In this document: piece after piece, positions 6,268 through 64,000 of the stretch
Numbering within the stretch: the first letter of the stretch is position 1
How the letters are laid out: every line of letters begins with the position of its first letter
Assembly (NCBI RefSeq): GCF_000143415.4
Contig: NW_003314360.1
Location: forward strand, 1-64,000
Source of the DNA: Selaginella moellendorffii
Lineage: Eukaryota; Plantae; Lycopodiophyta
Reading direction: 5' to 3'
Length of the DNA stretch: 64,000 nucleotides
Translations under genes and position numbers: made by a program
Notes under the pieces: model-generated
What the model was told of the DNA's origin: nothing
Seen by the model: the letters and a program-made list of their open reading frames with translations, nothing else
Databases searched by the model: none

Positions 6268-7362
6268 TCATATCAAGTTTGATAAATTTTGGATCTGGTT
6301 GAGTTTGTTTGAACTTGCCACCACGTTGCACCTTTTCGGGTCCGACACGATGATGGTGCGCTTTGGATCCAGAATCCAAGTCCCACGAAACGTGCCTCCA
6401 CCCAGTAGGGGGTTATCCATGCCATGGTAGCAGCTGCTCGCATAATGGAACACCAGATTCGCTGGGATTGTGCAGGAGAGAACATCCAGGAACTTCAGGA
6501 AATCTTTCTTCCCATTCCGGGACGCATTCGTGGCAAGGATATCACGGTAATAGATGAATTCGTCTTCCTTGTCCTGGATCATCCTGCACGTAGTGTTCAC
6601 GGCGTCCTGAAACGTCTGCACGCTCGGATCGGTGAGCAGCAGCACCGCCGGAAGATTGTTAAACTTCTTCTTGTAAAACTCCTTGGGAAACGAGAAGACG
6701 TCGTTCACCATCCACATATGATCGAGCATAGCGTTCTGAGCCCTGATGTAATCCAGGGACTCAACATCCTCATCGTCAAACGAAGCACCCATTGCGTAGA
6801 TGAGTGGCAGAATGAAGACGTTCTTCCTCCGGTAGAGCTCGTAGTCCTGCGTTAAGTCGTCACTCGAGATGCTTCTCGCCCAGCCCTCAACAGTGGAAAC
6901 CGTGCGCTTGAACAGCTCCGGCTTCAACAGAGACCTCAAATCCTCCATCAGATCGTGGCACGCTCGATAGGCAAGAATGTCCGGAACTTCCGCGAGCGAT
7001 GCGGTTCCATAGCAGAGGCTAAGAACAGTGTCGAGATACGATGTCGCGAGAGCTCCCGCAGCAACCTCGTTGTCATCAAACGGATCGTTCAGGAAGGCAG
7101 TGAGCCAGGCAAACTTGGCCGACGCCACCATGTTGGCTTTTGGAGCGTGAGGCGTGGAGAGGCACGTAAACATTGGAACTTTCCACTGGACCAGGCATTT
7201 CTTCTCCTCCGGACTGAAATCCCTCCTCATGCATTTGAATGCCCACTCGTTTGCTTCCTTGGTGATTGACATATACTCGGGATGCCTTTGGAAAGGTATC
7301 TCCGGCGTGAGAGCAAAGAGATGTTCTACCGCTGGTAGCTTCTGTAAACACGGACTTGCCAT
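6268..7362 (-). CDS. MTPSL: Microbial terpene synthase-like protein (class I, alpha-domain only), intronless, 364 aa
   Basis: Size and motif layout of bacterial/fungal-type terpene cyclases: Asp-rich motif LNDPFDD, pyrophosphate-sensor region YELYRR, NSE/DTE motif NDVFSFPKE and C-terminal HYASSCY at the RY position; no introns. Confidence 0.92.
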   Translation of the reverse strand: MASPCLQKLPAVEHLFALTPEIPFQRHPEYMSITKEANEWAFKCMRRDFSPEEKKCLVQWKVPMFTCLSTPHAPKANMVASAKFAWLTAFLNDPFDDNEVAAGALATSYLDTVLSLCYGTASLAEVPDILAYRACHDLMEDLRSLLKPELFKRTVSTVEGWARSISSDDLTQDYELYRRKNVFILPLIYAMGASFDDEDVESLDYIRAQNAMLDHMWMVNDVFSFPKEFYKKKFNNLPAVLLLTDPSVQTFQDAVNTTCRMIQDKEDEFIYYRDILATNASRNGKKDFLKFLDVLSCTIPANLVFHYASSCYHGMDNPLLGGGTFRGTWILDPKRTIIVSDPKRCNVVASSNKLNQIQNLSNLI

Positions 7363-7715
7363 TTCTTTAGAGATGGTTTCGAGATATTTTCTTCAATTTA
7401 TGCTGCTAGGTTTCACGTGATCATGCCCAAGAAGTTTCCTGCTTGGACTGACTTTGATTGTGTACAGAAAATAGAACCGGTAGTTGTCAAAGAAAAGGCG
7501 GTCAGTTATTCTCATCTAAACTGCAACGCTTTTTCTTTGGGAGTCTAATGAGTCCATTTATAATGACTTGAAAGATTGTTGTGTAGTCAATTCAAGTGTG
7601 GCACTCGTCAAAGTTGTGGCTGACTAGAATTCTCAACAACCAATCTCAACCAAGTTTGAAGAAGCAAGCATATAATTGCCAAGGGCTATTTGCTTCTCAA
7701 ATCTCAAATCTTCAT
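7363..7715. promoter_or_regulatory. Putative bidirectional promoter between MTPSL and P450
   Basis: 353 bp between divergent ATGs; TATAAT at 7671-7676 (+), TATAAA at 7557-7562 (-), G-box CACGTG 7414-7419, W-box AGTCAA 7585-7590 plus several TGAC cores. Confidence 0.55.
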
Positions 7716-9259
7716 ATGGGGACTCTCCTCTATGTCATAATCTTGCTTGCTTTTGTCTATGTCTTAAGGAAATATTTGCTGCGCCTTAAGCTGCCTCCAT
7801 CTCCATGGGGATTGCCCCTCCTTGGACACCTCCATCATCTCGCAGGAATTCCCTTCCTTTCATTGCATGCCCTGTCCAAGCAGTATGGACCAATTCTCTT
7901 CATGAAGCTGGGAACCGTGCCAGCGGTTGTCATCTCAAGCTCGGTTCTCGCCAAAGAGGTGTTGAGGTCGCAAGATCAGATGTTTGCTTCCAGGCCTTAC
8001 ATCCTCGTTGGAGACTATGGCTTGTACCACTTCCAGGGGATCGGACCTGTCCCTTACAATGATCACTGGAAGATGATGCGAAAGCTCTGCGCCACGGAGC
8101 TTTTCACTCCCAAGAGGATCGACTCGTTTCTCCCAATCAGGCTAGAGGAGATCACCGGCATGTTTTCGGCGCTTCGAGGTGCTGGAGCGCACAAAGCTGT
8201 GGACATGAGGAACATGTTGTCGATCTTCACCTTCAATGTCATGACCCGGATTCTCATGAACAAGAGATTCTTCGAGTACGGGGAGGATGAGGAACACATC
8301 GATGGCGAGGCCAAGCAGTTCAAAGACATTGTGTTCGAGACAGCAGACCAGGGACTCCAGTTTCATATCAGCGAGTTCATCCCGCACTGGCTCCGGTGGA
8401 TTGATTGGAAAGTCCCGGAACTGAAGAGGCTCCATGCGAAGAAGGATAAGTTTCTCCAGAACATCCTTGACCAGCACAAGGACATGGCATCGACAAAGGG
8501 ACACAAGGACTTCATGGACATCATGCTGCAAAATCTAGAGCACAGAGGAGCAGCCAGGGAGGATTTCATCAAGGCAGTAGTCCTTGTAAGTTTCCCCACA
8601 CAACTTGTTTTGGTCACCAATCTCAAAACCATTTTGATCTGCAGGAACTCACCATTGCGGGGACCGATACAAGCGCTTGCATTGTCGAATGGACCCTCCT
8701 GGAGCTCCTTCACAACCCCCGAGTCCTGAGTAAGCTCAAGGAAGAGCTCGATGCAGTGGTGGGATCAAGTAGTCACATGGTCGAGGAGCCCGATTTCCAG
8801 AACCTGGACTACCTCAACGCGGTGATCAAGGAAGCTTTTCGTCTCCATCCACCTCTGCCGCTCCTCATTCCTCACATGTCGACTCAGACTTGCACCATAG
8901 CCGGCTTTCACGTCCCAAAGAATGCCTTCACGTTTGTCAACGTATACTCAATCGGAAGAGAGCGAGGGGTATGGGAAAGGGCGGATGAGTTTTGGCCGGA
9001 GAGGTTTCTTGGTAAGTCCGTGGATGTTAGAGGCCAGGACTTTGAGTTGCTTCCATTCGGATCCGGGCGACGGGCTTGTGCGGGAATGCAGCTGGGCTTG
9101 AAGACTGTCCAGCTTTTGGTGTCCAATTTGGTCCATGCTTTTGACTGGAGCTTTGTTCCAGGCAAACCGAGTGAAGATTACCTCCTTCAAGAACGTCATG
9201 GCACTGTTAACTGGATCAAGACCCCATTACAAGTTTGTGTCGTTCCTAGGACCAGATAG
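7716..9259 (+). CDS. Cytochrome P450, CYP71 clan (A-type), 2 exons (7716-8585, 8645-9259), ~494 aa, intact
   Basis: N-terminal membrane anchor, PPSPWGLP hinge, phase-0 GT-AG intron 8586-8644 just before I-helix AGTDTS, KEAFR (ExxR), FWPERF and heme motif FGSGRRACAG. Confidence 0.95.
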
Positions 9260-10600: not shown

Positions 10601-10611
10601 AAAAGAAATAA

Positions 10612-10735
10612 ATTATTATGATCTGGCGTGAAAAGACAAAAATTCAGTCTTCCTAGACTATGTTACACCTCCTTTTGAGGTTCTTCACCATTTAACCACC
10701 CCCAAACTACCTTAAAAACTCCATTGCACCACCAC
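10612..10735 (-). mobile_element. Partial LTR of the short-LTR Ty3/gypsy family also seen at 15002-15200 and 28336-28568
   Basis: Shared sequence tgaaaagacaaa...ttgaggttcttcacca...accacccc. Confidence 0.65.
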
Positions 10736-11089: not shown

Positions 11090-12720
11090 ACCGTTTGCCC
11101 ACCCGAAGCACAAGCTTGATCCCGCATCACGTTTGGACTGGGAAACGTCCACATTGAGGGCACATCCGGATCCTTGGGTGCAGTGCGTATGCCCGCATCC
11201 CTGATCCGAACAGGCGCAAGCTCGATCCACGCAGCACAAAGACCATCTTCATGGGCTAAGGCCTACCAGCTCTACAAAAGAAGCTTGTAGTGAGCCGCGA
11301 CGTGATTTTCAACGAGCAAGAGCTGTATCGAGACCTCAAAGGTACTTCAAGCATTCAACTGATCTTGTGGATCTTTCTTTGGTTCTGGATAAGGTGCTTC
11401 CTCTTTCGCTCCCAGCTCCAGAGAATTTTCCTCCAGGAGGAGCTAACAACCAAGGCCCACAAGATCCTGGCCGAGCAGTGCCCTTGGTGGCTGGAGGTGA
11501 TGGATCTCCTCCTCACACGCCACTTCTTGCACCTCCAGGAGCCTCTACTGCTTCCACCAGCAGTCCCACTTCTTCAGCTGAGCCCTCGCTTGTTGCCATC
11601 GTCGACGACATTTTTGAAGGCGATGAAATATTTCATCAAGCATCCACCCAGGCCGTTGACCCCGTGATGACTCCTCCACCTCCACAGGTCTTTGGTCCAT
11701 GACATAACCAAGCCTTCAGTCAAAGTGCTTGAGGCCATTGCCCAGGAACCACGATGGAAAGGACAATGCAAGGCCTTCCTGAGCCTCAAGGATATATGGC
11801 CGCTCTTGCCAGTCCTGATGGTCAAAGCAAGAGGTGATGCAAGATGAGTATTCTTCTTTGCTGACACTTGACTCTCATGCCATTGCCATCAAAAGAAGGA
11901 AAGTCGTGAGCTCCAAGTGGCTCTTTAAAGAAGAGCAAGGAAGTACAAGGTGGATGGGAGTGTGGAGCGATTCAAAGTCAGATTTGTCACTCCTGGCTTC
12001 TCGCAAATTCAGGGAGTTGACTATTCTGAGACTTGCGGTCGGGTAGTTAACCTAACCACCATCCGCTTGCTTTTGGTTTTAGCAGCCGAGCTTGATCTTG
12101 AGCTCTATCAACTCAATGTGCGCACATCATTCCTCAATTGTGATCTTGAGGAGGAGGTGTATGTGGCACAGCCTTAAGGTTTTGTCCTTCCAGGCCAAGA
12201 ACACCTCATGTGCCAGCTGCATAAAGCTCTCTATGGGCTGAAACAAAGCCCCAGGTCTTGGTATAACAAGATTAATGGTTTTCTAATTACTCTTGGCTTC
12301 ATATGCAGCTCAGCCGATGGTAATCTCTACATCTACTTTGAAGGTGAAGGATTTCTCTTCCTAGTGCTTTATGTGGATGATATCGCTTCTAACCAAGTCC
12401 AGCTTATTCACAAGATTAAGACATATCTCTCTGCAAAATTCGAGATGGTGGACCTTGGTGAGCTGCATTACTGCCTTGGAATCCAAGTACGACACAACAA
12501 GAGACATGAGATTCTAGAGCTCTCTCAAGAAAAATACATCCTGGATGTACTTCAGAGGTACTCTATGCTCGATGCTAATCTTGTGGCCACTCCTATGCCC
12601 GCAGGCCTTAAGCTTTCTAAAGCTTCTACATCCGAGACATATCGCACTGCCGGAAAAGCGCCAGAACTCTCTACCGTTCGATGGTCGGCAGCTTGATATA
12701 TCTCGTGATTTGAACAAGGC
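11090..12720 (+). mobile_element. Degenerate Ty1/copia pol fragment (post-integrase and reverse transcriptase)
   Basis: SRDVIFNE, ERFKVRFV..GFSQIQGVDY, LHKALYGLKQSPRSW and LYVDD motifs; stops and frameshifts. Confidence 0.9.
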
Positions 12721-14149
12721 CGGATTTGGGGGTGAATTATCAACTAGATTCATCTCAACTGGGCAAGCAAAGACTGGCAAATGCTACAACCTATTCTTCA
12801 CTGGATTGTGATAGGAGAAGAGTATGGCACACTAACACTAGGCACATTAATAGTTTTAATCATTCATGCCCAAGCAAAAAAAGAGGTAAAGGACTCATCC
12901 CAAGATCAACTTAAGTCCTGGAGCATGGCCATTGCAATGCTCTGTGATCAGATCATGGTGTGCATCCTCCACCATCATTACTGTCACTGCCAGCATCAAA
13001 TCCTTGAAGTTGGGCAATTCAGTGTTCAAAATAGTGAACTTGGGTTGCAAACTTTTATGACAATATGGTGGACAAATGCTTCCAAAAAATTGTTATATAG
13101 ACAAGGGAAAAAACAATTCACCAAATTTTTAAAGGGCTTAAATGGCTAAGCCCAGATGGAAAATCTTCTTTTACCATTTACAATAGACAAACCTTATGTG
13201 CACAGCATCCAACTTGAATATATACAACCTATCCAAATAAAATAGTCTTGCAATGAATATTGGTATGTTTTTTACAAGCCATGAATAATAGAGATCATGA
13301 AAAGTTAGGATCCTATTTGGAGAAAAAAGTCCCTTTAATTCAATAACATGGTTATCAACCATCATAAGATTTAGTAGCTTATAGGGACAATATTTCAAAT
13401 TATTAATGATAATCATTAATATAGAGCTTGGATAAAGTGTATTAACATTTATTTTTGTGATGAACCTATCTACCATATTAACATTCCAATTAGCCATGTC
13501 TATATAAGGGTACCAATGTCAACAAATTTATCTTGGCTTACCAAAAGATTAATGCATAATTTTACTAAAATTTCACCTCTACCTCTACTTTAACTTGCTT
13601 TGTTATGGTTGAATGCAGACTTGAGTAATTTTTTGTCCAAAAGCAAAACTTTATTTATGACATTAAGCAATTTTGTTTTTGGGAGACTTGAGTAAGGATG
13701 ACATTTGACAATATTATGGTGATGATCTCACAACACTTATTTAGTACTCATGCACTCGGAATGACAGTATGATATAATTTAACAATTTAATCAATTTTAT
13801 GTGTGCAATGTGGTGCAAAGTATGTCTTTCCTTCACTTTATAAGGGCTTATTTTTATTGGTTTAGTTTATAGCCTTTAGTGAAGGTAAAGCAAAATGTAT
13901 ATAAACTTGTGCATCCGGAAAGAGTCAGAAAGATGTTTTAGCTAAGCTTTTATAAATTGAGCATAATGTAAAGTCTTCAAAGTTGAAAAAAATATATATA
14001 TTATAAATAATTGCAGACCAAAAGAGTGACTAGAGACTATAGCCGAAATTTTTACTCACGAATGTAAGTTTCTTATCATAGGCTTCATTTTTCTCAATTA
14101 TACATATATTACTTTTGTAGTGAATAAAACTTAAAATGATGTAGATTCA

Positions 14150-14995
14150 AGAGGCTCTCTTTGCATGGAGCACAACTAGATGATATTGATCAGGCTCTAT
14201 GTCAACAACACACTAATCATTATGGAGAACATGGTTATTTCACTTGCTGTTAAGGAGTAGTTGTCTTCAAGATTTACTATGGTCAATATTGGACCAATCA
14301 AGTAATGCCTTGGCAGCCAAATTTGTCATTGCAATGATGTCATGGACCTGTCTTAAGCTCATTATGTTTTTGATCTTTTGAATTATTTTCAAATGTAAAA
14401 CACAAAGCTAATACTAACACCAACAACTTCTAGCTACATCCTTGTAGCTCAACACATCAGAGGACCACCATGCTATGATGACTGGTGTTCCATACCAATA
14501 AGCCATTGGCAGCCTACTATACTTAATAGTGTGCACACATCAAGATATCACATTCTTTGTGAGAATTGTCTCCTAGTTCATAGAGAATCCAAGTTGGGAA
14601 CACTAGGTTGCTGTGAAAGGATTTTCCACTACCTTATTAATATTGTCAACTATGGCTTTGTTTATGAAGTTCTAGAGGTAGAGTTCGATTGGAGCAGATA
14701 TGTTGATGCTAACTTTGCTGGAGATCTAGATTTTTGCAAATCCACATTAGATTATTGTTTTAACTTGGGCTTTGCATTGATCATATGGTCCAATAAGAAA
14801 CAGCACATCACCATACTAAAGTAGAGTGTGTGGTGCTGATAGCAATGACACAGGATGCTCTTTGGCTACACAAAAATCTCTTGTGAGAGATTATACCAAT
14901 CTTCTGTGACAATGAGAGTGTTATTGCTCTCACAAAGGACATATGACATCACGGAAAGACAAAACTAGATAACATATTTGTAAGGGAACTTTTAA
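14150..14995 (+). mobile_element. Highly degenerate Ty1/copia RT/RNase H fragment
   Basis: YVDANFAGDLD..KST..Y.F...I.W.NKKQ and IFCDNESVIAL. Confidence 0.75.
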
Positions 14996-15001
14996 TGTTT
15001 A

Positions 15002-17115
15002 TATTAGGCTTCAGCTTTGACCATGTGGTCAATGTTGGTCAAAGGAGGCTCAAGGGTATATTAAGGCATGTTAGGGTAAGGAACTAACAATGGAACTTTT
15101 GAGGTAGCTCAGGGGTGGTTGGGTGGTGAGGAACCTCAAAAGGAGGTGTAGTGTAGTCTATGAAGACTAGATTTTTGTCTTTTCGTGCCAGATCATAACA
15201 TTGGTATCAGAGGGAAGTTGGTTACGATGGCCAACCAAGCTGAACGCTGGAATCCTATTGTTAATGGTGGTGACGGAGCTATAAAGGTTTGGACCATTCA
15301 AGATGTTGTTCATGAGCTGTAAGCCCTTAACTGAAATCAACAAGAGATGCAAGATGAGATGCATGGCATGATGGATACCATGTGTGAGTGTGTTGAATCA
15401 CTCGAGGCTGAACGTGGTAGCGTTCCAAGTAAGCCTTCTTTGGTAGATCAACTCAAGATTCCAACTTTTTCCAGTGATGGTGGTGTGAACGAGTGTCTCG
15501 CTTGGCTAGCCAATGTGAAAAAGTTCTTGGCTGCTAGAGGAACTCTAGATGCAAAGGTTTTAGTGGCTATTCCAATGGTTTTGTGTGATGCAGGTATTTG
15601 GTGGTGGAATTGGCTTAAAAATCCTATGTTGCGGATAAAAAACCACCAAATGAGTTTGAGGTTGCTTTTCATCTATGTTTTGCCCCTTATTATGACATGA
15701 AGAATGCTCATATAGAACTTCAACATTTTCAGCAAGGAAAAATGACGCCCGAGAACTATATTAAGAAGTTTATTCACTTGATTAGTCATGTTTCCACAAA
15801 GGATCTAGATCAAAGCAAGTCCTACTTCATTAATGGCCTTCATAGTGAGAGTATGTGGCAACACTTATATCATTCTTAGTCTACAAAGAATTTGGAGGAG
15901 CTCTTTGATACAGCTCATCAACTTTACAATGACAAGCACAAATCTTGCAAGCATTCGAGGAGTTCTTCTGTCAAGAATCGTCATGATGATTATCATGGAC
16001 ACAAGGATGGAAACAAGCATCACAAGCTAAAGTTTTTGGTGGTTACTTTGGATGCAAAGGGGTCAAAGAAGCAGAAGTTCTTTGTGAAGAATTATAAACA
16101 GGGTTGTCATTATTGTGGTGAGCTCAGACATTACAAGGCTGATTATCCACAGTTGAAAAACAAGCAACAGAGCAAGAAGAATGGTCAATCTTCTACTGAC
16201 GGTAAGTTAGATATTAAAAAGTTGCAAACTTTGCAATATAAAGATAATGGGGATGATCATTTTAGTCGAAGGAAGAGGCTTTCGATCATTGCTCATCAAC
16301 TCAATTGTGTTTGGAACAGGATGGAGCCCGAGGACACTCGTGAATCAATTTTAATGCTGAGTGGCTGTCAAGTGTGGATTTTACTAGATAGCAGGAGCGA
16401 TGACAACTTTGTTTCGACAAAGTTTGTTGCAGAGCATGGCTTGGTGACACAAAGAGTTCTTCCATATACAGTGGAAGGTGTAGCTACCTTTGCTCAGCAT
16501 TTCAATGCTTGTGTAGTGGGGCTGGAAATGTTGGTTGGCAAAACCACACTTCTGGAGACTTTTTATCTTGCGGATATTATTATCAATAAAAATATATTAA
16601 GTTTAATAAAAGTTTGTATATGTTTTTATCAATTTTTACCACTTTCAAAATATTTCTACCACTATTTATAACATTCTTGATATTTGTTGTAAAAGTTAGA
16701 ACAATTGACATATTGGAAAGCTCTTTATAAAGACAACCACTAATTAAGATAGAAATTTTATAGAGTCAAATATCCAAAGCTTTTTTTGGGGATTTTTGGG
16801 ATGCCATGGTTGGTGAAGGTGGATCTGGAGGTAAAGTGGAGTATTAAACGTGTCTTGCTGGAGTACAGTGGTGTTAAAGATGTGTGGTTTGGAGAGGGAA
16901 TTTAACCTCCAGTTATTATGCTCTCTACTACATCTTTAGAGTGGGTTTGTCATAATGGAAAACCACTTTCGAATTACTTATTATTTGTTCGTGACTTGGG
17001 GGACCAAGGCACGTGTGGGTGAGAAGCAACAATATGGAATATACTTGACGAGTTTATTGATGTTTTTCCATCCTCATGGGTTGCCTCCATTATGAGGTGT
17101 GGAACATGGGATTAC
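15002..17115 (+). mobile_element. Degenerate Ty3/gypsy element: 5' LTR (15002-15200), tRNA-iMet PBS, gag and protease; truncated at a Copia element
   Basis: LTR ends ...ATAACA followed by TTGGTATCAGAG (15201-15212); gag PTFSS..WL, zinc knuckle CHYCGELRH, protease LLDSRSDDNFV resuming as IFGMPWL after a ~210 bp AT-rich insert (~16580-16790). Confidence 0.85.
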
Positions 17116-18922
17116 ATTCGTTTGGTTAAACCTCTCAACCACACCATTCTGCTGTGGTGTATAAACAACTATGTACTGATGAGAAATTCCTGCCTCAGCT
17201 AGGAATTGGAGAAATCCTTGTGCAATGTATTCTCCTCCTCCATCTGTGCGTAGCACATGGATTTTTCTTCCTGTAAAATTTTCTGCCCAGCTTTTGAAAA
17301 TTTTAAAGTTTTCAAAAACTTCGGATTTGTTTCCTACCAAACACACCACTGTGTATCGTGAGTGATCATCTATGAATGAAACAAAATACCTCTTTCCACT
17401 TAGGAAATTTACAGGAAGATAGCAAACATCTCTGTGAATAAAATCAAGCACTACTGTGGCCTGGTTTTCCAAGGGTCGGGGAGGAAAAGGATGGCGTGCA
17501 TGTTTGCCAAATTGGCAAGTATTGCAAAGTCCCAGATGTCCAGATGGAAATGCGATGCCATCAGCTAGCTTGCTGTGAGCAAGGTTCTGGAGATCCTTCT
17601 CATTTACATGCCCGAGACGAGCATGCCAAAGATGAATTGTCTCTTGGCCTTGAAGTGCTAGCATGTATGTCCCTGGATAAACAAGCTCTGCGTTGAGGCG
17701 ATAGAGTGTATCGTACCTCACTCCAGTTGCCACAGTGGTGCCATCTGCTCCAAAAACAGTACATCCTTCTGCAAAGAATGTGATTGAGAACCCTTGATCG
17801 GAGGCGACGCCAACCGAAAGGACAGTCTGGCCTGCACCGGGCACATAGTGCATGTTATGGATTTCCTTGAGAGATCCATTGGGCAACTTCACTTGCACCA
17901 TGCCACGGCCTTCAACGTCGAGAAGCCGCTTGTCTCCAACAAAGACTTGGTTTGGGGAAAGCAATTCGTGGAAAGTGTGGAATGCTGTACGAAGAGGAGT
18001 CATGTGGTAAGAAGCACCACTGTCCAACCAGAGGACGTCTAAACCAGACACCGGTGACGAGGCCACGGCCATCATCAGCAACGAGTCTGTTTGAGTTAGC
18101 ATCCGTTGGGTGTTTGCTTTCTTAGCTCGACATTCTTGCTCTATGTGCCCCATCTTCCCGCAGTAGGTACACGGCCCCTTCTTTTTCTTGTTTCCATTTG
18201 TGGTGGAGCCAGGTGTTGGTGTCGCAGGAGCACTGGCAAATCCGCGAGAATTCCCACGCTTCTTGGCATTTCCATTTCCTGACTTCTTGCTGATGAACAA
18301 AGCCTGATCACGAGCAGAATCTGAGGAGGTCGTGCCTGCTTTTCGCTCCAGAAGCTTGCGCTCTTCTTCCAAGAGATTGGAATAGATCGTCTAGGGTCTT
18401 TCCTGGAACGAAGGAGAACATGGAGGAAGACGGTTGGAGTTCAGAAGAAACCGAATAGAGAAGGAAAGCTTTGGCATAATCGTCCGAGACAGGCGCGCCA
18501 GCCTCCTTAAGCTCTTGCATCATCCCCTTAAGCTTGCCAATGTACGATGCCATCGTGTCTGTTGGCTGCATCCGGAGAGAAAGGAACTTCTGGGTTAAGG
18601 ACGATCATGGCATTTGCTGCTTTCGCAGCAAACACCTGCACCAAGGACTACCAATTCTCGTGAGCGGTCTTCGAGAGATCCAGCAGATGGATGAACTCGT
18701 CGCCGAGTCCTAAGCCAAGCGGGCTCTTCTATTCTTGGCTTTCCACACTGGCTGGAGAGCGGGCTCAGCTGGTTCAGCTTCGGTGCCGTCCACGATTGTC
18801 CAGCAATCGTTTGCCATCAAGATGAGCTGGACCTTTGTTCTCCAGGTTGCGAAGTTTTCTCCTGTGAATTTGTGTAGTAGTTTCTCCCAGCTTGGGGTTA
18901 CAGCAGCGGAAGAAGATGCCAT
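17116..18922 (-). mobile_element. Ty1/copia gag-protease-integrase, frameshifted and 3'-truncated
   Basis: KFTGENFATW gag start, CTYCGKMGHIEQEC knuckle, WLDSGASYH protease, LWHARLGH..CNTC, integrase core FIDDHSR / RTDGGGEY / PQQNGVVER. Confidence 0.92.
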
Positions 18923-19213
18923 CTAAAGTTAGCGCTAGAAACAGAAATTTTATTGACGGGAGTGAGACGCGGGGAAAGTGCACACGCGCCTACACTGTGG
19001 GCAAAGCTGCTCGTGGCGTTTCGGAGAAGCATTTAGAACGAGATACCGCTGGGACTGTTATTTGGAACTCCGCTCCAAGTCATGGTCACTCCCGAAGAGG
19101 TACTATTAGGCTGATTGATAAACATAAGTACGGAGATTCCAGCATTGATCCAAAGGTATAATAAGCATGCCTGATGAGTGAGGCGCAACAGAAATACGTC
19201 TCTACCGTCGTCG

Positions 19214-19313
19214 NNNNNNNNNNNNNNNNNNNNNNNNNNNNNNNNNNNNNNNNNNNNNNNNNNNNNNNNNNNNNNNNNNNNNNNNNNNNNNNNNNNNNNN
19301 NNNNNNNNNNNNN
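19214..19313. other. Assembly gap (100 N, true size unknown)
   Basis: Run of exactly 100 N. Confidence 1.
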
Positions 19314-19498
19314 TCATTGCCACGCTTTTCCTGGGCCGTTCACTTTACTGGTTTGCCGTCAAAATGGTCCAAACTCAAGAGTAAACTGATGTAGAAGGAA
19401 GTTTAGCTTTTCTTTTGAAAAATGTTTCAAATTGAAAATAAAAGCTCCTCATTCAAAAATAAACGCAGGCCAAAACTTTGAAAGAAAATTAATGTAAC

Positions 19499-20894
19499 TC
19501 AAGGATGAGACTTGATAAACTCCTCACTAAAAGTCCACAGCTCTGCAGCCAACTTCATGTCCTTGGCATGAGGGGTGCAATCCGCTTCGTTGCAATCCAA
19601 GTAGTACTTTCCACTCACGCCCTCCATGCAAGGATGGACCGCAAGAAGCATGGTTGTAGCAGCGCCCTGAAAGAAATCACAGCTTTAATCCAGAAACGTA
19701 GGCTATGATATGTTTGTACCTGCGGGATGGATTTGCAAAGTGGGCTCGCGAGGAAGAGAAGCAGCTCTGCACAGCAGCACAAGTTGATCAATCTCAATTC
19801 TTTTCAGATACTGTTTCATGAACTTACTAGCTGAAGTCTGATTGAAATCTCTTCCAAGTTTCGTCTTGATAGTTCCAGGATGAAGTGAATTTACAGTCAC
19901 GTTGGCACCCTTCTCCTGAAATGGAAGATCATCAAAATTATGTCTGGGAAAACTCGAGCACAAAAACTTTGAATCTATGGGCACCTTCAAGCGGCTTGCT
20001 AACTCCCTGGTATGCAGTATGTTGGCCAGTTTGGATCTTCCGTAGCTAGTAATCCATTGGAAGCTGCACGACGAGAGTTAAAGAAAGTTCATTGGAAGAT
20101 TGCAAGGAAAACCGAAATGCTTCCTCCTAATTGTCAATGAAAAAACTGACCTGTTCTTATCATTCAGCTTGTCAAACTCAATCCCGCCTTTTGGAACATA
20201 TCTGTGACCTTCAGACGCCACCATGACAATCCGACCTTGCACTCCAGTTTGAGATGCAGTCTGGATCATCTTGTCCAACAGCAGCTCAGTGAGCAAAAAC
20301 GGACCTGGATCATCATCCAAAGAGTGAAGGTTTTTCTAACAGACAAAACTTGAACACCATACCCATATGGTTTGTCGCGAAATCGAGCTCCAAGCCATCC
20401 GGTGAGAGCTGGAAGTTATTGGCCGTCATCCCAGCATTGTTTCTGCATTGATCCATGCATTTTGATCAGAAACACTAACAGGAGTGACTCACATGAGGAT
20501 GTGGAGCGGGAGATTTAGAGCCTTGAAGTCGTCGACAAATTTCCTGACCGACTTGAGGGAGCTCAGATCCAGCTCAAGGACAGTGACCCTTGCATTAGGG
20601 AATTCGCGTTGGATCTTGGACTTGGCTGCTTCAGCGTTCTGTAGCTTCCTGGCTGGGATAACAACGTGCGCACCGTGCTTGGCGAGAACTCTGGCAGTCT
20701 CAAACCCAATTCCGGAGGTAGCCCCTGTAGCTTGATGATAAGAAATCGAAGCAAACTATCGATGGAATTGGCATACCTGTGACGATTACCACTTTGGATT
20801 CCAGAGAAATCCCCTTTGCAACTTTCTCGGCTGTAGCTCCCGATCCAAAGCCTGTAGCGCCGCGGTATCCTGTGAAGTAGCTTATCACGCCCAT
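19499..20894 (-). CDS. TIC32-like/retinol dehydrogenase-type classical short-chain dehydrogenase/reductase, 8 exons, 321 aa, intact
   Basis: Exons 20777-20894, 20493-20724, 20363-20442, 20151-20304, 19985-20063, 19828-19915, 19720-19766, 19499-19666 (966 nt, all GT-AG introns). Motifs [20 protein letters not shown], catalytic YGRSK, LHPG and QGAATT. Confidence 0.93.
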
Positions 20895-21386
20895 GATTCC
20901 TGGATTGCTTGCAAAGACTTGTGACTTTGATCCCGAGACGGCTGCTTAAATACATTCCTGGCCAGCTTGACCGACGCGCAAATGTGACATCCACGAAAGC
21001 GCTTAGAGAAGATTCTGAAACATTCGGTCAATTTGGAATGGCGGTTGATTACAAGGTATTATCAATCAATAACCATGACGATTCATTGCTCAAACAACAC
21101 GTCGACTGACGTACATAATGTCCATGCATGACCTTTGTTCACCGCGCAAACGCCACTTTGATATCTCAGCGTGTGAAAAGTCGCCTGGGCGCCATTGCTC
21201 GAATTTTCAGCCCTCTAAAGAACATGTCAATGTCAAACCCAGCGAGCGAATGAAAACCGCGGCTTCCAACTGATATATAAATGGTTGCTTGCTGTGCCGA
21301 AGTCATTGACAAAGCTACATCTCGAGATCGATCAGCAAAAGAAAGCACAGCTCTCTTTCTCTCAGCCCTGTAAAGGTTCTTCAAGG
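20895..21386. promoter_or_regulatory. Putative bidirectional promoter between SDR and FAD oxidase
   Basis: 492 bp between divergent ATGs; TATATAAA at 21274-21281 (+), TATTTAA at 20946-20952 (-), W-boxes TTGACC 20967-20972 and GGTCAA 21026-21031. Confidence 0.55.
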
Positions 21387-23063
21387 ATGATAGCGATACT
21401 ATCGATATTCTTGGTCGTTCTATTTGCTCCCGGCCATGTCCACTCCAAGTGTATAGCGGGCGAGCTGTGCTGGCCAGACGCACAGACCTGGGCATCCTTC
21501 AATCGCTCCGTGGGAGGGAGAATGATCAGCGTGGCCCCTCCAGCATCGCCATGCCATGATCCAAACTACGACGAGCGAGCCTGCAACGCCGTGAGGAGCG
21601 GCGGGAACAGTCCGTTCTGGAGGACTGATCAACCGGGTGCGCTGCAACGGACGAGCTGGGAATCGTTTGGGGAGCAGCGCTGCCTGATCTCCTCCAACAG
21701 GACCGCCGCTTGCTTCCAGGGCGCGGTCCCGGTCTACGCGGTCAACGTTACTCGGGCGGTCCACGTCCAAGAGGCCGTCAAGTTTGCGTCCCGGCACGAC
21801 TTGCGCATCGTGATACGAAACACGGGGCATGACTTCCTCGGGCGGAGCACGGCGGTGGGAGCTCTCAGCATTTGGGTGCACCACCTCCAGAAGATCCAGT
21901 TCCACGAGAGCTTCAAATGCAGCCGTGGTAGCGACCGTGGCTACTCGGCAGTGACGGTGGGAGCTGGAATTCAGTGGGAGGAGCTCTATCGGCAAGCGTA
22001 TCAACGAAAGATGATCCTGGCTGGCGGGGGATGTTCCTCGGTTGGAGCAGCTGGCGGATACCCTCAAGGTGGCGGCCAAAGTTTCCTTTCCCCGCTAATC
22101 GGCTTGAGCGCCGATAACGTTCTCGAGTACGAGGTGGTGACCGCGGATGGTAGGCTTGTCAAAGCAAATGCATGCCAAAACACGGACTTGTTCTGGGCTC
22201 TCCGGGGTGGCGGAGGAGGAACATTCGGAGTTGTGCTCTCGGTGACGCACAGGACTTTTCCAGCTCTTGACAGCCTCGTCTTCGCTCCTCACAACTTCAA
22301 CGCCCCCGATACCACCACCTTTCAGGGGCTGCTCACTCTGTTTACAAGGTTGAATCCCTCTCTGTCCGATGCCGGCTGGTCTGGCTACTTTTTCTCGACG
22401 AGCCAGAGCCTGACGCTAACGTTCCTGCTGCCCAACCGGAACGTCTCGTATGCTTCCACCACCTTGGCCCCGCTGCTATCGTACGCGCGGGAGAACAACA
22501 TCCGGATCGACGGGAGCTTGGAGACGTATGCCTCGTACTGGGACTGGCACTTGCAGTTTCAGTGTGGAGGGCAGGAATCGTGCTTGGGCCTCAACAACTT
22601 GGGAGTCTCGGATGTCTTCGCAACGAGGCTGATCCCGAGATCGCTCTTCAACCACGAACAAGACCTCCTCCCAAAGGCCATGATGCACATCATGACCGAG
22701 CTGCAAGTTCCAGCTACGTATGCGATCCTGGGGGGCGGAAAAGTGCGAGAACCCCAAGACAGCGCTGTGAATCCGGCGTATCGCGACGGACTGTGGCTGC
22801 TCGTATCGCCCCTGACTTGGCGGGACAATGCGACGGTGGCGGAGATGAGGGCTGCTGCGAATCTAGTGTCGCAGGCGAACAAGCTCTTCATCGATCTCAC
22901 GCCGGGCTCCGGGACTTACGTGAACGAGGCCGATTACAACGAGCCCAATTGGCAGCAATCCTTCTTTGGGAAGAACTATCCTCGCCTGTACCACATCAAG
23001 CGCAGGGTCGATCCTACCAATCTCTTTACGTGCCATCACTGCGTGGGTAGCGAATTCAACTGA
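21387..23063 (+). CDS. Secreted FAD-linked oxidoreductase (VAO/BBE superfamily, FAD_binding_4 + BBE domains), fungal-type, intronless, 558 aa
   Basis: Signal peptide MIAILSIFLVVLFAPGHVHS; RNTGHDFLGRS (histidyl-FAD), GGGCSSVGAAGG, LFWALRGGGGGTFGVV, YVNEAD and FFGKNYPRL..IK...DP.NLF.C..CVGSE. Confidence 0.93.
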   Translation: MIAILSIFLVVLFAPGHVHSKCIAGELCWPDAQTWASFNRSVGGRMISVAPPASPCHDPNYDERACNAVRSGGNSPFWRTDQPGALQRTSWESFGEQRCLISSNRTAACFQGAVPVYAVNVTRAVHVQEAVKFASRHDLRIVIRNTGHDFLGRSTAVGALSIWVHHLQKIQFHESFKCSRGSDRGYSAVTVGAGIQWEELYRQAYQRKMILAGGGCSSVGAAGGYPQGGGQSFLSPLIGLSADNVLEYEVVTADGRLVKANACQNTDLFWALRGGGGGTFGVVLSVTHRTFPALDSLVFAPHNFNAPDTTTFQGLLTLFTRLNPSLSDAGWSGYFFSTSQSLTLTFLLPNRNVSYASTTLAPLLSYARENNIRIDGSLETYASYWDWHLQFQCGGQESCLGLNNLGVSDVFATRLIPRSLFNHEQDLLPKAMMHIMTELQVPATYAILGGGKVREPQDSAVNPAYRDGLWLLVSPLTWRDNATVAEMRAAANLVSQANKLFIDLTPGSGTYVNEADYNEPNWQQSFFGKNYPRLYHIKRRVDPTNLFTCHHCVGSEFN

Positions 23064-23156
23064 GAATCCAGTGAAAAACATAGCGATTCCATACAAATGT
23101 TGAAATGTTACAGTAGCGATTCATTGATTCAAAAATGAAAAGCTAGGGTTCTTGAG

Positions 23157-24697
23157 ATGGGGCTCCTTGGTTTCGTTCTTGGGCTCTGGATTGCCATTCT
23201 AGCAGCTGCCAAGACGGTGAAGCGAGACGGTGAGTCGATCCTCTCCAGCTGCATTTTCGTCTTGCCAATTCCAGTCAAGGCATTGAACGAGCTCAAGGCA
23301 GCTGGAGGATGGAAGGTTATGTACGCTTGGAATGGGGAGGATCCCTGTGGGGATGGAGACGCGGCATTGTGGCCGGGAATCACTTGTTCCTCCCCAAATG
23401 ACGATGGCTATCGAGTGGTCACGGAATTGTGAGTTTTAATCGTCACTTTCTTCTTTCTTTCCAGGGAGCTCTTTCAAGTGTCGATCATTGGAACGTTCCC
23501 GATCGGTGTCACAAATTTGCTGGATCTCAGGAAACTGTGGGTTGGTCTGTGTTGATTTTCGTTTACTGAGTTCTTGCGTTCTTCTCTGGAAGGGACTTGC
23601 ATGGCAACAAACTCACCGGACCGATTCCTCCTCAAATAGGACGGTTGGAGAAGCTTGTAACCCTGTAATGTTATTGCTAGCGGTCTGGCCGAAAAATTCT
23701 CGACTTATTTTGCTTTTTTCTTTGCAGGAACTTGAGATGGAGCAAGCTGCCTGTTGAGATTGGGCAGCTGAAGAAACTACAAAACTTGTGAGTAGAGTTT
23801 CGCTTCTGTTCTAAGTTCTTTTTTTCATCGTGTCTGTCTGTCAGGTTTTTAAGTTTTAACAGCCTTAGAGGACCTATACCGAAGGACCTCACGTATCTGC
23901 AGGAGCTTCGATACGTGCATCTTCACGAGAACAAGCTTATCGGCCGGATCCCTCCGGAGTTTGGAGAACTTCCTTATCTCTGACAATTATAAGCTTCAGT
24001 TTTATCCATACAGACATATTTTCTTATATTATTCTCTCGCAGGGATGTCAGCAACAATCATCTTATGGGAACCATCAGAGAACTGCTAAGAAGCGAACAG
24101 AATCGTGCTCAAGAGGCATTTCCATCTCTACGAAATTTGTAAGCTTTTCTTCTTTTGTGCTTAGATTCTTAAGCTCGACGTCCCCGCAGGTACCTAAACA
24201 ACAATTACCTCACCGGAGGAATACCAGCAGAACTTTCGTACTTGTGCAATCTAGAAGTTCGATGCTAGAGTTGTCCTTGCCTGCTGATTCCCTCCGTGGT
24301 TATGCAGGTACTTGTCTAACAACAAACTTACAGGTCCGGTACCGGACGCACTCGCAAGCATCCCGAAGCTAACCTACCTGACGCCTCCATCAATTTTTCT
24401 CATGCAAAAGCTCTTTTTTCTCGTAGATACCTGGATCACAATGCTTTGAATGGCCGACTATCGTCAGCCTTCTACAGCCATCCGAGCCTGAAAGAGATGT
24501 ACGTTGGCTCTTTGGCTTGATCATCTATGTAGTAGTATCCAAGCGTTTCTTTTTCCAGGTATATTGAAGGGAGCCAATTCAGCTCTTCCGCCAAACCAGT
24601 TGGTATACACAGGACAAGGCATCATCGTCCCACATGCTACAGTTACTATCGTATACTAGCAACAATGGAAGTATCCGACGCTGACTTCATTTTTTAG
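23157..24697 (+). pseudogene. Secreted plant-type leucine-rich-repeat protein gene (At5g61240-like), probably pseudogenised
   Basis: Signal peptide, KTVKRD/VKALNE..W.G.DPC..W.GITC LRRNT, multiple LxxLxLxxNxLxGxIP repeats and C-terminal EVSDADF; in-frame TGA at 23981-23983 and eroded donor sites (e.g. ATAAG after 23988). Confidence 0.8.
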
Positions 24698-63764: not shown

Positions 63765-64000
63765 TCTTCATCAGCAATAGGAATGTTAGTGTCAAGTTCT
63801 GGCTTGTCAAGAAGAAATACCTAGACCAGTCTGCATCGGACAAAGAAGGATTCAACCTCATGAACAGAGTAAGCAGCCCCTGAAAGGTGGTGATATCAAG
63901 GGTGCTGAATTTGTGAGGAGCAAAGATGTCAAAAGCTGGAAATGTCCTGTGTTTTGCCAAGAGCACAACTCCAAATTTTCCTCTGCTGTCACCCTGGAGA
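63765..64000 (-). pseudogene. Degenerate copy of the FAD-linked oxidase (internal fragment, continues beyond the window)
   Basis: FGVVLLAKHRTFPAFDIFAPHKFSTLDITTFQGLLTLFMRLNPSLSDADWSRYFFLTSQNLTLTFLL closely matches the product of 22200-22435; truncated at the 3' side. Confidence 0.9.

What the first reader, a model, noticed from the sequence alone, without database searches (positions are those of the whole stretch)
21387..23063. Intronless fungal-type FAD oxidase: probable second horizontally acquired gene
Seen: no introns and GC-rich, between multi-intron plant genes. The N-terminal C..GE.CWP...W..FN.SVGGR...P.A.PCH, NTGHDFLGRS..GALSIW.HHL and terminal F.C..CVGSE features resemble fungal secondary-metabolite FAD-linked oxidases (isoamyl alcohol oxidase/ZEB1-like) rather than angiosperm BBE-like proteins (RSGGHDYEGLS type). 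His at 21828 and Cys at 22032 suggest bi-covalent FAD. The signal peptide implies an apoplastic or vacuolar step, possibly producing H2O2.
Basis: partly seen in the sequence, partly recalled or inferred. Interest (0 to 1): 0.72.

Follow-up and report, generated by a model that had tools for sequence, protein, structure and literature searches.

The report
Fungal-type flavin oxidase gene in Selaginella
An intact, intron-free gene in the spikemoss Selaginella encodes a secreted flavin oxidase of a kind otherwise typical of fungi; it belongs to a many-copy family shared with ferns that most likely entered early vascular plants from a fungus, which is interesting but is one more example of a known kind of event.

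Summary
Window 21387-23063(+) is one uninterrupted 558-codon ORF for a FAD_binding_4 + BBE flavoprotein.

- **Host:** Selaginella moellendorffii; 98% identical to SELMODRAFT_115290.
- **Family:** The best solved relative is the fungal secreted oxidase MtVAO615 (E 2.6e-88, full length). Plant BBE-likes match only the FAD domain (E 1e-16 to 1e-23).
- **Phylogeny:** The gene sits in a Selaginella clade (100/99) that joins fern genes (97/92). That clade nests among fungal and bdelloid-rotifer sequences.
- **Mosses:** Moss homologues form a separate clade with chytrids and tardigrades (100/100). An AU test rejects a single plant clade (p 3e-6). No seed-plant or algal protein appears in three top-120 lists.
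- **Real plant genes:** Paralogs lie on Mb-scale scaffolds among PPR, receptor-kinase and AP2 genes.
- **Transcription:** RNA reads show unspliced, + strand transcription at low level, between spliced SDR and LRR genes.
- **Composition:** GC3 is ordinary for Selaginella coding sequence.

The transfer is therefore old (shared by lycophytes and ferns), not a recent event at this locus. The donor is unresolved and the substrate is unknown. Linkage to the neighbouring terpene synthase, P450 and SDR genes is suggestive only. This scan had already reported paralogs of the family on other DNA of this genome, with the same reading.

The parts
21387..23063 (+). Complete intronless CDS (558 aa plus stop) of a secreted MtVAO615-type FAD-linked oxidase
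   Evidence: ORF. Pfam FAD_binding_4 and BBE. 98% identical to SELMODRAFT_115290. No splice joints in RNA reads.
21274..21282 (+). TATATAAAT, a TATA-box-like element about 105 nt upstream of the ATG (inferred promoter element)
   Evidence: Read directly from the sequence. RNA coverage begins in the bin 21284-21397. Its function is inferred, not tested.
21387..21446 (+). Predicted signal peptide (residues 1-20)
   Evidence: Hydrophobic N-terminus, mean Kyte-Doolittle 3.2. Similarity to the mature, secreted MtVAO615 starts at residue 16. Inferred; no predictor was run.
21738..22166 (+). FAD_binding_4 domain (residues 118-260)
   Evidence: Pfam PF01565, E 1.1e-20.
21828..21830 (+). His148, predicted 8-alpha-N1-histidyl FAD attachment site
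   Evidence: Aligns with His157 of MtVAO615. Invariant in 87 of 87 family members.
22032..22034 (+). Cys216, predicted 6-S-cysteinyl FAD attachment site (second covalent link)
   Evidence: Aligns with Cys222 of MtVAO615. Cys in only 15 of 87 family members and in 6 of 13 Selaginella sequences.
22041..22043 (+). Val219, small 'gatekeeper' residue that permits reaction with O2
   Evidence: Aligns with Val225 of MtVAO615. Val in 81 and Ile in 6 of 87.
22077..22079 (+). Gln231 in GGGQS, where 83 of 87 relatives have His (His237 of the MtVAO615 pocket)
   Evidence: Shared only with the local copies P0001, P0002 and P0003.
22914..23039 (+). BBE C-terminal domain (residues 510-551), including Glu514 (22926-22928)
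   Evidence: Pfam PF08031, E 5.1e-14. Glu514 aligns with Glu519 of MtVAO615, which replaces the catalytic Tyr of other VAO-type oxidases. Invariant in 87 of 87.
19499..20940 (-). Upstream neighbour: multi-exon short-chain dehydrogenase (SDR) gene, transcribed divergently, with its start about 450 nt from the oxidase ATG
   Evidence: High RNA depth, an intron at 20724-20775 and molecule ends at 20910. The collinear reference loci carry adh_short gene models in the same place. Single exons gave no Pfam hit. The limits given are approximate.
23157..24660 (+). Downstream neighbour: multi-exon LRR-type plant gene that starts 45-95 nt after the oxidase stop codon
   Evidence: Five GT..AG introns of 36-63 nt are seen in RNA. 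The first exon has an LRR N-terminal-like sequence. The collinear reference model carries LRR hits. The 3' limit is approximate.
63775..63999 (-). Fragment of a second paralog that runs off the window end
   Evidence: tblastn: 71% identity to residues 272-348.
6268..7362 (-). Microbial-type terpene synthase (MTPSL) ORF, 14 kb upstream (context)
   Evidence: Pfam Terpene_syn_C_2, E 4e-12.
7596..9259 (+). Cytochrome P450 gene in two exons (context)
   Evidence: Pfam p450 hits on both ORFs.

Best explanation
**What it is.** This is a functional nuclear gene of Selaginella for a secreted, N-glycosylated flavoprotein oxidase of the fungal MtVAO615/MtVAO713 subclass of the VAO/BBE-like superfamily.

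**How it works (inferred from the solved fungal homologue).**
- FAD is tethered covalently through His148 (8-alpha link) and, in this copy, also Cys216 (6-S link).
- A substrate C-H next to an alcohol or similar group transfers a hydride to the flavin, with the invariant Glu514 acting in place of the usual catalytic Tyr.
- The reduced flavin is re-oxidised by O2 past the small gatekeeper Val219, giving H2O2.
- The substrate is unknown, as it is for MtVAO615 itself.
- The pocket differs from MtVAO615: Gln231 replaces His, and Tyr449 and Asp451 are not conserved.

**Origin.**
- The gene belongs to a family that expanded in Selaginella and is shared with ferns.
- The family most likely entered an early vascular-plant lineage by horizontal transfer from a fungus, possibly of the zygomycete grade, and is absent from seed plants.
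- Mosses hold a separately acquired relative.

**Shown here:** ORF integrity, family membership, key residues, plant genomic context, unspliced transcription, tree topology, and rejection of plant monophyly.

**Inferred:** secretion, oxidase chemistry, direction and age of the transfer, and the donor.
For: **Gene and family**
- Intact ORF with Pfam FAD_binding_4 and BBE.
- Full-length match to MtVAO615, E 2.6e-88, and to MtVAO713, E 4.8e-71. Plant BBE-likes score at most 85 bits, over the FAD domain only.
- MtVAO615 is a secreted, glycosylated oxidase with bicovalent His157/Cys222 FAD, Glu519 in place of the catalytic Tyr, and gatekeeper Val225 (PMC6017366).
- The window protein has His148, Cys216, Val219 and Glu514 at those positions. 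His and Glu are invariant in 87 of 87 relatives.
- It has five N-glycosylation sequons, 13 Cys and a hydrophobic N-terminus.

**Host and integration**
- 98% identical to a S. moellendorffii protein on a 1.44-Mb scaffold.
- Paralogs lie among PPR, PUF, lectin receptor-kinase, AP2 and PORR genes.
- The flanking genes are spliced with small plant-type introns.
- dN/dS is 0.31 against the 98.6%-identical copy.

**Transcription**
- Low-depth, strand-consistent RNA reads with no joints lie across the CDS. Contigs from two further runs match the window letters with 0-1 differences.

**Origin**
- Three searches list only Selaginella, ferns and mosses among plants. All other named hits are fungi, bdelloid rotifers and tardigrades.
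- Careful ML tree: Selaginella core 100/99, Selaginella plus ferns 97/92, moss plus chytrid plus tardigrade 100/100. The 87-row tree agrees.
- The AU test rejects one plant clade (delta lnL 143, p 3.3e-6).
- The fern gene sits on a 181-Mb chromosome.
- The moss gene has gained intron sequence.
Against: - The trees are unrooted.
- The sister group of the lycophyte-fern clade (Calcarisporiella / Basidiobolus / Mortierellomycota) has only 62/66 support, so the donor, and strictly the direction, are not proven.
- Absence from seed plants, algae, liverworts and hornworts rests on top-120 lists from a word-seeded search, not on an exhaustive taxon-by-taxon survey.
- No enzymatic data exist for any close relative; MtVAO615 has no known substrate.
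- Gln231 replaces a His conserved in 83 of 87 relatives, which could change or weaken activity.
- Most RNA reads in the deeper run carry the letters of the near-identical copy P0001. Expression of this exact copy is therefore low and rests on few reads, plus contigs whose RNA nature is only a guess.
- The positional counterpart in the reference assembly is broken by an insertion, so this copy may be dispensable.
- Secretion was not tested with a predictor.
Confidence: 0.72

Rival explanations
1. The oxidase is a tailoring enzyme of a terpenoid biosynthetic gene cluster. It would act on products of the neighbouring microbial-type terpene synthase, P450 and SDR, for example by oxidising a terpene alcohol to a ketone or aldehyde in the apoplast or vacuole. 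This is a functional reading, compatible with the origin given above.
For: - An MTPSL, a two-exon P450 and an SDR-like ORF lie 11-15 kb upstream, and a second SDR lies 450 nt upstream.
- In the reference scaffold, the 160-kb region holds at least four oxidase copies interleaved with P450, SDR and MTPSL genes. One copy lies 1.3 kb from an MTPSL.
- The local oxidase copies share a private pocket change, His to Gln at 231, plus Cys216.
- Related fungal enzymes act on bulky secondary alcohols of secondary metabolism.
Against: - Three other paralog loci have no terpene synthase within 10 kb.
- The local repeats are segmental duplicates of one region, so they count as one observation.
- Retrotransposon pieces separate the genes.
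- In the two RNA runs the adjacent SDR is covered 100-300x and the oxidase 1-10x, so there is no sign of co-regulation.
- Three of the four reference copies are disrupted.
- No chemistry has been tested.
Confidence: 0.2
2. The transfer is recent and specific to Selaginella, possibly a joint arrival with the MTPSL as part of a fungal cluster.
For: - The gene has no introns, and the nearest non-plant hits are fungal at 48% identity.
- It lies close to an MTPSL.
- Selaginella MTPSLs also group with fern MTPSLs and fungal synthases (PMC7826640).
Against: - Selaginella paralogs are 45-56% identical and dispersed over many scaffolds.
- Ferns fall inside the same clade (97/92), with one Selaginella paralog closer to ferns than to the rest (98/92). 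Duplication therefore preceded the lycophyte-fern split, or a later plant-to-plant transfer must be invoked.
- Codon composition is fully host-like.
- The nearest fungal gene has no terpene synthase beside it.
Confidence: 0.06
3. The gene descends vertically from an ancient eukaryotic gene, with two old paralogs, and was lost in algae, most bryophytes, seed plants and most other eukaryotes.
For: The trees cannot be rooted, and the deep branches within the large clade are poorly supported.
Against: - This needs many independent losses.
- Plants are split into two clades, each nested among fungal lineages. The AU test rejects plant monophyly.
- The only animal holders are bdelloid rotifers and tardigrades.
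- The family is present in all major fungal phyla sampled.
Confidence: 0.07
4. The gene is a divergent member of the vertically inherited plant BBE-like clade, or a fungal contaminant in the assembly.
For: It shares the Pfam architecture with plant BBE-likes.
Against: - Plant BBE-like structures match only residues of about 112-296, at E 1e-16 to 1e-23, against a full-length 2.6e-88 for the fungal enzyme.
- Glu stands in place of the catalytic Tyr.
- Contamination is excluded by Mb-scale plant scaffolds, spliced plant neighbours within 100-450 nt, presence in two assemblies with allelic or paralogous variation, and RNA reads from plant libraries.
Confidence: 0.01

Closest known systems
MtVAO615 (XP_003663615; PDB 6f72/6f73) of Myceliophthora thermophila: secreted bicovalent VAO-type flavoprotein oxidase, 'clade II' of Ferrari et al. 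2018 (PMC6017366)
   Same: The alignment is collinear over residues 16-556 (E 2.6e-88). Shared features are the His and Cys FAD tethers, Glu in place of the catalytic Tyr, the Val gatekeeper, the N-terminal Cys/Trp-rich stretch, the C-terminal CxxCVGSE tail, the N-terminal secretion signal and multiple N-glycosylation sequons.
   Different: The host is a plant. Pocket residues differ: Phe150 for Tyr159, Gln231 for His237, Leu448 for Tyr449, and Cys450 and Asp451 are deleted, which also removes the Cys450-Cys476 disulfide. Neither protein has a known substrate.
MtVAO713 (PDB 6f74) and its relatives: the Hypomyces subiculosus alcohol oxidase and ecdysteroid-22-oxidase; also fungal proteins annotated 'isoamyl alcohol oxidase MreA-like'
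   Same: They belong to the same subclass, with the same Glu and gatekeeper (E 4.8e-71). Fungal hits P0115 and P0174 carry the isoamyl alcohol oxidase name at 37-38% identity. The characterised members oxidise bulky secondary alcohols.
   Different: MtVAO713 has Ser at the Cys position and so a monocovalent FAD. The window protein has Cys. Identity is lower than to MtVAO615. ZEB1 itself was not compared, because no sequence was available from the tools.
Plant BBE-like enzymes (EcBBE, AtBBE-like 15, PpBBE1, Phl p 4, THCA synthase)
   Same: They share the superfamily, the Pfam architecture, covalent FAD and a secretory-pathway location.
   Different: Only the FAD domain aligns, at 62-85 bits. 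The substrate domain shows no detectable similarity by phmmer, and the catalytic Tyr is replaced by Glu. The window protein is not a member of that clade.
Other fungus-to-plant transfers confined to non-seed plants: MTPSL terpene synthases, GH88, fungal fruit-body lectins (PMC12448838, PMC12890914, PMC7826640)
   Same: They show the same phyletic pattern: present in lycophytes, ferns and/or bryophytes, absent from seed plants, and nearest relatives in fungi. They have also expanded in the recipient.
   Different: The enzyme family is different. No paper in the held library names this oxidase family as a transfer. Here the plants received the family at least twice.

Membership tests
VAO/PCMH flavoprotein superfamily, BBE-like group | FAD_binding_4 (PCMH-type) domain followed by a C-terminal BBE domain | tested here: met
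   PF01565, E 1.1e-20 (74 bits against a cut-off of 26). PF08031, E 5.1e-14 (52 bits against a cut-off of 21).
VAO/PCMH flavoprotein superfamily, BBE-like group | His of the GHD motif for the 8-alpha-histidyl FAD linkage | tested here: met
   His148 aligns with His157 of MtVAO615. Invariant in 87 of 87.
MtVAO615/713 subclass (clade II of PMC6017366) | Full-length collinear similarity, including the N- and C-terminal extensions | tested here: met
   Residues 16-556 align with 21-561 of 6f72, 300 bits.
MtVAO615/713 subclass (clade II of PMC6017366) | Glu at the position of the catalytic Tyr of other VAO-type oxidases (Glu519 / Glu543) | tested here: met
   Glu514 is aligned to it and is invariant in 87 of 87 relatives.
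MtVAO615/713 subclass (clade II of PMC6017366) | Small gatekeeper residue that allows O2 reactivity (Val225 / Pro234) | tested here: met
   Val219.
MtVAO615/713 subclass (clade II of PMC6017366) | Second covalent link through Cys (bicovalent members only) | tested here: met
   Cys216 aligns with Cys222. Only 15 of 87 relatives have Cys; the ferns and the nearest fungal sequences have Ser or Ala. The chemistry of the link cannot be tested here.
MtVAO615/713 subclass (clade II of PMC6017366) | The MtVAO615 substrate-pocket residues (Tyr159, His237, Tyr449, Asp451) | tested here: not met
   The window protein has Phe150, Gln231 and Leu448, and the Cys450-Asp451 pair is deleted. A different substrate is expected. 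These residues define the MtVAO615 pocket, not the subclass.
MtVAO615/713 subclass (clade II of PMC6017366) | Secretion and oxidase activity (H2O2 formation) | not testable with these tools
   There is only a hydrophobic N-terminus, sequons and many Cys.
Vertically inherited plant BBE-like clade | Closest relatives are plant BBE-likes over both domains, with the catalytic Tyr conserved | tested here: not met
   Plant structures match at E 1e-16 to 1e-23, over the FAD domain only. Glu replaces the Tyr. No tree with plant BBE-like sequences could be built, because the tools supplied none.
Horizontally acquired gene (fungus to plant) | Physically integrated in the host chromosome among host genes, and not a contaminant | tested here: met
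Horizontally acquired gene (fungus to plant) | Recipient sequences nested within donor diversity, and recipient kingdom not monophyletic | tested here: met
   Trees. The AU test gives p 3.3e-6. Caveats: the trees are unrooted, and the immediate sister has only 62/66 support.
Horizontally acquired gene (fungus to plant) | Patchy distribution in the recipient kingdom (absent from algae and seed plants) | tested here: inconclusive
   None appears in three top-120 lists down to E of about 1e-83. The lists are capped and the search is word-seeded. It was not a taxon-by-taxon survey.
Plant biosynthetic gene cluster (terpenoid) | At least three enzyme classes of one pathway in close linkage | tested here: inconclusive
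   Linkage of MTPSL, P450, SDR and the oxidase is seen here and in the reference scaffold. All instances belong to one segmentally duplicated region.
Plant biosynthetic gene cluster (terpenoid) | Co-expression and a shared pathway | tested here: inconclusive
   In two RNA runs the SDR neighbour is 10-100 times more covered than the oxidase. No condition series was available, and no chemistry.

The most novel reading that the evidence does not exclude
The oxidase and the microbial-type terpene synthase have the same lycophyte-plus-fern, fungus-like phyletic pattern. They would have arrived from the same kind of fungal donor, possibly together. In Selaginella they would now work with a plant P450 and SDRs as a hybrid, partly foreign-derived terpenoid gene cluster. 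The local oxidase subfamily (Cys216, Gln231) would be specialised for that pathway.
Probability: 0.12. Interest if true: 0.75.

Novelty: new member of a known kind. Interest (0 to 1): 0.48.

Why it matters
It adds a whole enzyme family, secreted covalent flavin oxidases, to the short list of genes that non-seed plants appear to have taken from fungi. The others include microbial-type terpene synthases, GH88 and fruit-body lectins.

The family entered plants at least twice, and also entered bdelloid rotifers and tardigrades. That points to a gene that moves easily among organisms sharing soil and moss habitats.

The family has expanded to well over a dozen copies in Selaginella, so it probably contributes to lycophyte-specific extracellular oxidative chemistry or H2O2 production. 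No member of the MtVAO615 branch has a known substrate. The plant copies, some beside terpene genes, therefore offer a new route to finding one.

The gene is already in public annotation, and this scan has reported paralogs. The value here is in the phylogenetic framing and the locus context, not in the discovery of a new kind of system.

Tried and rejected
- **AU test, 87 rows:** It did not finish in three runs. It was repeated on a 46-row subset chosen to keep every group. Rows left out were near-duplicates and extra members of the same groups, plus the long-branched partial Selaginella sequence P0024.
- **SDR exons:** Exon-by-exon Pfam scans of four upstream SDR exons gave no hit, because they are too short. 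The joined, spliced models of the SDR and LRR neighbours were deliberately not built or searched. Their identity rests on the collinear reference gene models and on direct reading.
- **Not on record:** P0005 and P0076 are not on record for context look-up.
- **Paper not held:** Richards et al. 2009 (Plant Cell) is not in the library. Ma et al. 2022 was not searched for by title and did not surface in the topic searches, so it was not consulted. I cannot exclude that either lists this family.
- **Yue et al. 2012:** The 'FAD-linked oxidase' listed there is attributed to CFB bacteria, and I take it to be a different gene.
- **GC content:** Rejected as a transfer signal.
- **Contamination and plant BBE-like membership:** Both rejected.
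- **Not run:** The family was settled by a full-length match to a solved structure, and those results carry no taxon names.
Full report
**Observation**

Window 21387-23063(+) is a single uninterrupted ORF of 558 codons plus a stop. The two residues it singled out fall exactly at its coordinates: His148 at 21828 and Cys216 at 22032.

Pfam finds FAD_binding_4 (residues 118-260, E 1.1e-20) and the BBE domain (residues 510-551, E 5.1e-14).

The region is more GC-rich than its flanks. GC3 of the gene (0.71) lies inside the range of ten other Selaginella coding sequences or exons measured here (0.55-0.76). Composition is therefore ordinary for a coding sequence of this genome and says nothing about origin.

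**Identity of the genome and reality of the gene**

- The protein is 98% identical to SELMODRAFT_115290 of Selaginella moellendorffii, which lies on a 1.44-Mb scaffold.
- Window 7537-24617 is collinear with part of reference scaffold GL377616.1 (locus L010). The order there is P450, retroelement pieces, SDR, oxidase, LRR gene.
- In that reference copy the oxidase is split by a 3.2-kb insertion. In the window it is intact.
- A nearby inverted duplicate in the reference (L005, P0001) is intact. It differs from the window CDS at 24 of 1677 bases, with 12 amino-acid changes and no indel, giving dN/dS 0.31.
- Three more distant paralogs (P0006, P0007, P0013) are also intronless. They sit among typical plant genes: PPR, PUF, L-lectin receptor kinase, AP2 and PORR.

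Contamination is excluded.

**Transcription**

Two raw RNA-seq runs and two sets of contigs were laid on 20600-24000.

- The CDS is covered at low depth (about 1-10x with 12% of each run read).
- The reads lie on the same mate orientation as the downstream plus-strand spliced gene.
- No splice joint falls inside the CDS.
- The flanking genes are strongly covered and spliced. The upstream minus-strand gene has an intron at 20724-20775 and molecule ends at 20910. The downstream plus-strand gene starts at about 23108-23157 and has GT..AG introns of 36-63 nt.

There is an important caveat. In run X23, 16 of 17 variant positions carry the letters of the 98.6%-identical copy P0001, so most of those reads come from that copy. 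Reads with the window's own letters are the few in X24 and roughly 10-30% of those in X23. Contigs of X1 and X2 match the window with 0-1 differences, but their RNA nature is only a guess. The window copy is therefore transcribed weakly at best in these samples.

The neighbours were identified without joining exons:

- Single SDR exons gave no Pfam hit.
- The collinear reference gene models carry adh_short upstream and LRR hits downstream.
- The first exon of the downstream gene reads like an LRR N-terminal cap.

The joined spliced models were not built or searched.

**What the protein is**

By far the best solved relatives are two secreted oxidases of the fungus Myceliophthora thermophila. 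MtVAO615 scores E 2.6e-88, with residues 16-556 aligned to 21-561. MtVAO713 scores E 4.8e-71. Plant BBE-like structures (Phl p 4, AtBBE-like 15, PpBBE1, EcBBE, THCA synthase) match only the FAD domain, at E 1e-16 to 1e-23.

The paper on these fungal enzymes (PMC6017366) shows the following:

- MtVAO615 is secreted and glycosylated.
- It has Glu519 where other VAO-type oxidases have the catalytic Tyr.
- It has the small gatekeeper Val225, which fits rapid reaction with O2.
- It has no known substrate.

The window protein has His148, Cys216, Val219 and Glu514 at these positions. In an alignment of 87 relatives:

| Position | Conservation among 87 relatives |
|---|---|
| His148 | invariant |
| Glu514 | invariant |
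| Val219 | Val in 81, Ile in 6 |
| Cys216 | Cys in only 15 (6 of 13 Selaginella sequences; none of the ferns; none of the eight Calcarisporiella sequences, the nearest fungal hits) |

Bicovalent FAD is thus plausible for this copy but is not a family trait.

The pocket differs from MtVAO615. Phe150 stands for Tyr159, Leu448 for Tyr449, and Cys450 and Asp451 are deleted. Most notably, Gln231 sits in GGGQS where 83 of 87 relatives have His. This Gln is shared only by the local copies P0001, P0002 and P0003.

A hydrophobic N-terminus, five sequons and 13 cysteines fit a secretory-pathway protein.

**Mechanism (inferred by homology)**

The enzyme would be a covalent flavoprotein. It would take a hydride from an alcohol or similar group of an unknown, probably secondary-metabolite, substrate, and pass the electrons to O2 to give H2O2.

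**Origin**

Three word-seeded searches of 5.8 billion proteins were run, with the window protein, a moss member and a fern member as queries. Among plants they list only:

- Selaginella, with well over a dozen paralogs at 45-56% identity on many scaffolds;
- ferns (Adiantum, Ceratopteris);
- mosses (Ceratodon, Physcomitrium).

Every other named hit is a fungus from all major phyla, a bdelloid rotifer or a tardigrade. No seed plant or alga appears down to about E 1e-83.

A careful ML tree of 46 sequences (LG+C20+F+G4 PMSF) gives these supports, as ultrafast bootstrap / SH-aLRT:

| Clade | Support |
|---|---|
| Selaginella core, including the window gene | 100/99 |
| Selaginella core plus ferns | 97/92 |
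| Selaginella paralog P0052 with the ferns | 98/92 |
| Mosses with Spizellomycetales chytrids and tardigrades | 100/100 |

The 87-sequence quick tree agrees. Forcing all plant sequences into one clade costs 143 log-likelihood units and is rejected by the AU test (p 3.3e-6).

The lycophyte-fern clade lies next to Calcarisporiella, Basidiobolus and Mortierellomycota, and then the rotifers. That placement has only 62/66 and 65/77 support, and the trees are unrooted. The donor is therefore unresolved, and the direction rests on parsimony: the family is universal in fungi and sporadic and polyphyletic in plants.

Other points on age and residence:

- The nearest fungal gene is itself intronless.
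- The Adiantum gene is intronless on a 181-Mb chromosome.
- The Physcomitrium gene spans more than its coding length, so it has gained intron sequence.

Together this indicates an old acquisition by an early vascular-plant lineage, or by lycophytes with later spread to ferns. It was followed by expansion in Selaginella and absence from seed plants, with an independent acquisition in mosses.

**Locus context and possible function**

Upstream in the window lie:

- a microbial-type terpene synthase (6268-7362, minus strand);
- a two-exon P450 (7596-9259);
- an SDR-like ORF (9894-10391);
- copia fragments;
- a second, expressed SDR that diverges from the oxidase promoter.

In the reference scaffold the 160 kb around this place holds at least four oxidase copies, three of them disrupted. 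They are mixed with P450, SDR and MTPSL genes, and one degenerate copy lies 1.3 kb from an MTPSL.

This is suggestive of a metabolic cluster. Several points weaken the case:

- All instances are segmental duplicates of one region.
- Three other paralog loci have no terpene synthase nearby.
- The fungal relative has none either.
- The two RNA runs show no co-regulation with the adjacent SDR.

I rate a terpenoid-tailoring role at about 0.2. Selaginella MTPSLs are reported to group with fern MTPSLs and fungal synthases (PMC7826640). That is the same pattern as this oxidase, and it keeps a common origin open as the most novel reading.

**Comparison with what is known, and novelty**

- The protein is a member of the MtVAO615/713 subclass by every sequence criterion that defines the subclass. 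It is not a member of the plant BBE-like clade.
- Fungus-to-plant transfer confined to non-seed plants is a known kind of event, seen for MTPSL, GH88 and fruit-body lectins (PMC12448838, PMC12890914).
- I found no paper in the held library that names this oxidase family as such a transfer. Two large surveys were not consulted: Richards et al. 2009 is not held, and Ma et al. 2022 was not searched for by title.
- The gene is in public annotation under a name borrowed from a fungal protein.
- This scan has already reported paralogs on other DNA of the same genome, with the same conclusion.
- What I add is the separate moss clade with a formal test, the residue-level comparison, the copy-resolved RNA evidence, and the locus history.

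**Verdict**

This is a new member of a known kind, of moderate interest.

Noticed in passing
window 63775-63999 (-): A fragment of a second oxidase paralog (71% identity to residues 272-348) runs off the window end. It is in inverted orientation about 41 kb from the main gene.
   Followed up: partly
L010:10001-14758 (reference GL377616.1), collinear with window 21387-23126: The positional counterpart of this gene in the reference assembly is split by a 3.2-kb insertion and lacks about 190 bp (window 22388-22581). The intact window copy is closest in sequence (98.6%) to an inverted duplicate about 20 kb away (L005). This could reflect presence/absence or haplotype polymorphism, or gene conversion between the inverted copies.
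   Followed up: partly
L006:10001-15793 (reference GL377616.1): A frameshifted, N-terminally truncated oxidase copy lies 1.3 kb from a microbial-type terpene synthase. Its flanks match window 23-3291 and 6208-7491 at 92%.
   Followed up: partly
window 22077-22079 (codon 231): The local oxidase subfamily (window, P0001, P0002, P0003) has GGGQS where 83 of 87 relatives have GGGHS. This His lines the MtVAO615 pocket. The consequence of the change is unknown.
   Followed up: partly
Proteins P0101, P0121, P0124, P0131 (mosses); P0135-P0151 (tardigrades); P0136, P0139 (chytrids): The moss members form a 100/100 clade with Spizellomycetales chytrids and tardigrades, and bdelloid rotifers hold a further clade. 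The family seems to have moved repeatedly among organisms of soil and moss-cushion habitats.
   Followed up: partly
window about 19210-19320: A run of N (an assembly gap) lies in the 3' part of the upstream SDR gene region. It shows as X runs in the ORF translations.
   Followed up: no
window 23108-23845 (+): The downstream LRR-type gene starts only 45-95 nt after the oxidase stop codon. It has very small introns (36, 45, 56, 57 and 63 nt). It uses two acceptors one base apart (23593 and 23594) in comparable numbers of reads. A loose 5' end at 23175 hints at an upstream leader exon.
   Followed up: no
window 21398-21625: A few RNA reads lie in the opposite mate orientation (1-3x) over the 5' part of the oxidase CDS. 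They may be antisense transcripts from the divergent SDR promoter region.
   Followed up: no
window 12208-12696 (+), 17074-18372 (-), 39956-41530 (+): Ty1/copia reverse-transcriptase and integrase pieces lie between the P450/SDR genes and the oxidase. A Ty3-type RT-RNase H ORF lies further downstream.
   Followed up: no
Protein P0052 (Selaginella, 717 aa): This gene model joins the oxidase to a PF03083 (SWEET/MtN3) domain, which is probably a merged annotation. It is the Selaginella paralog that groups with the fern genes.
   Followed up: no
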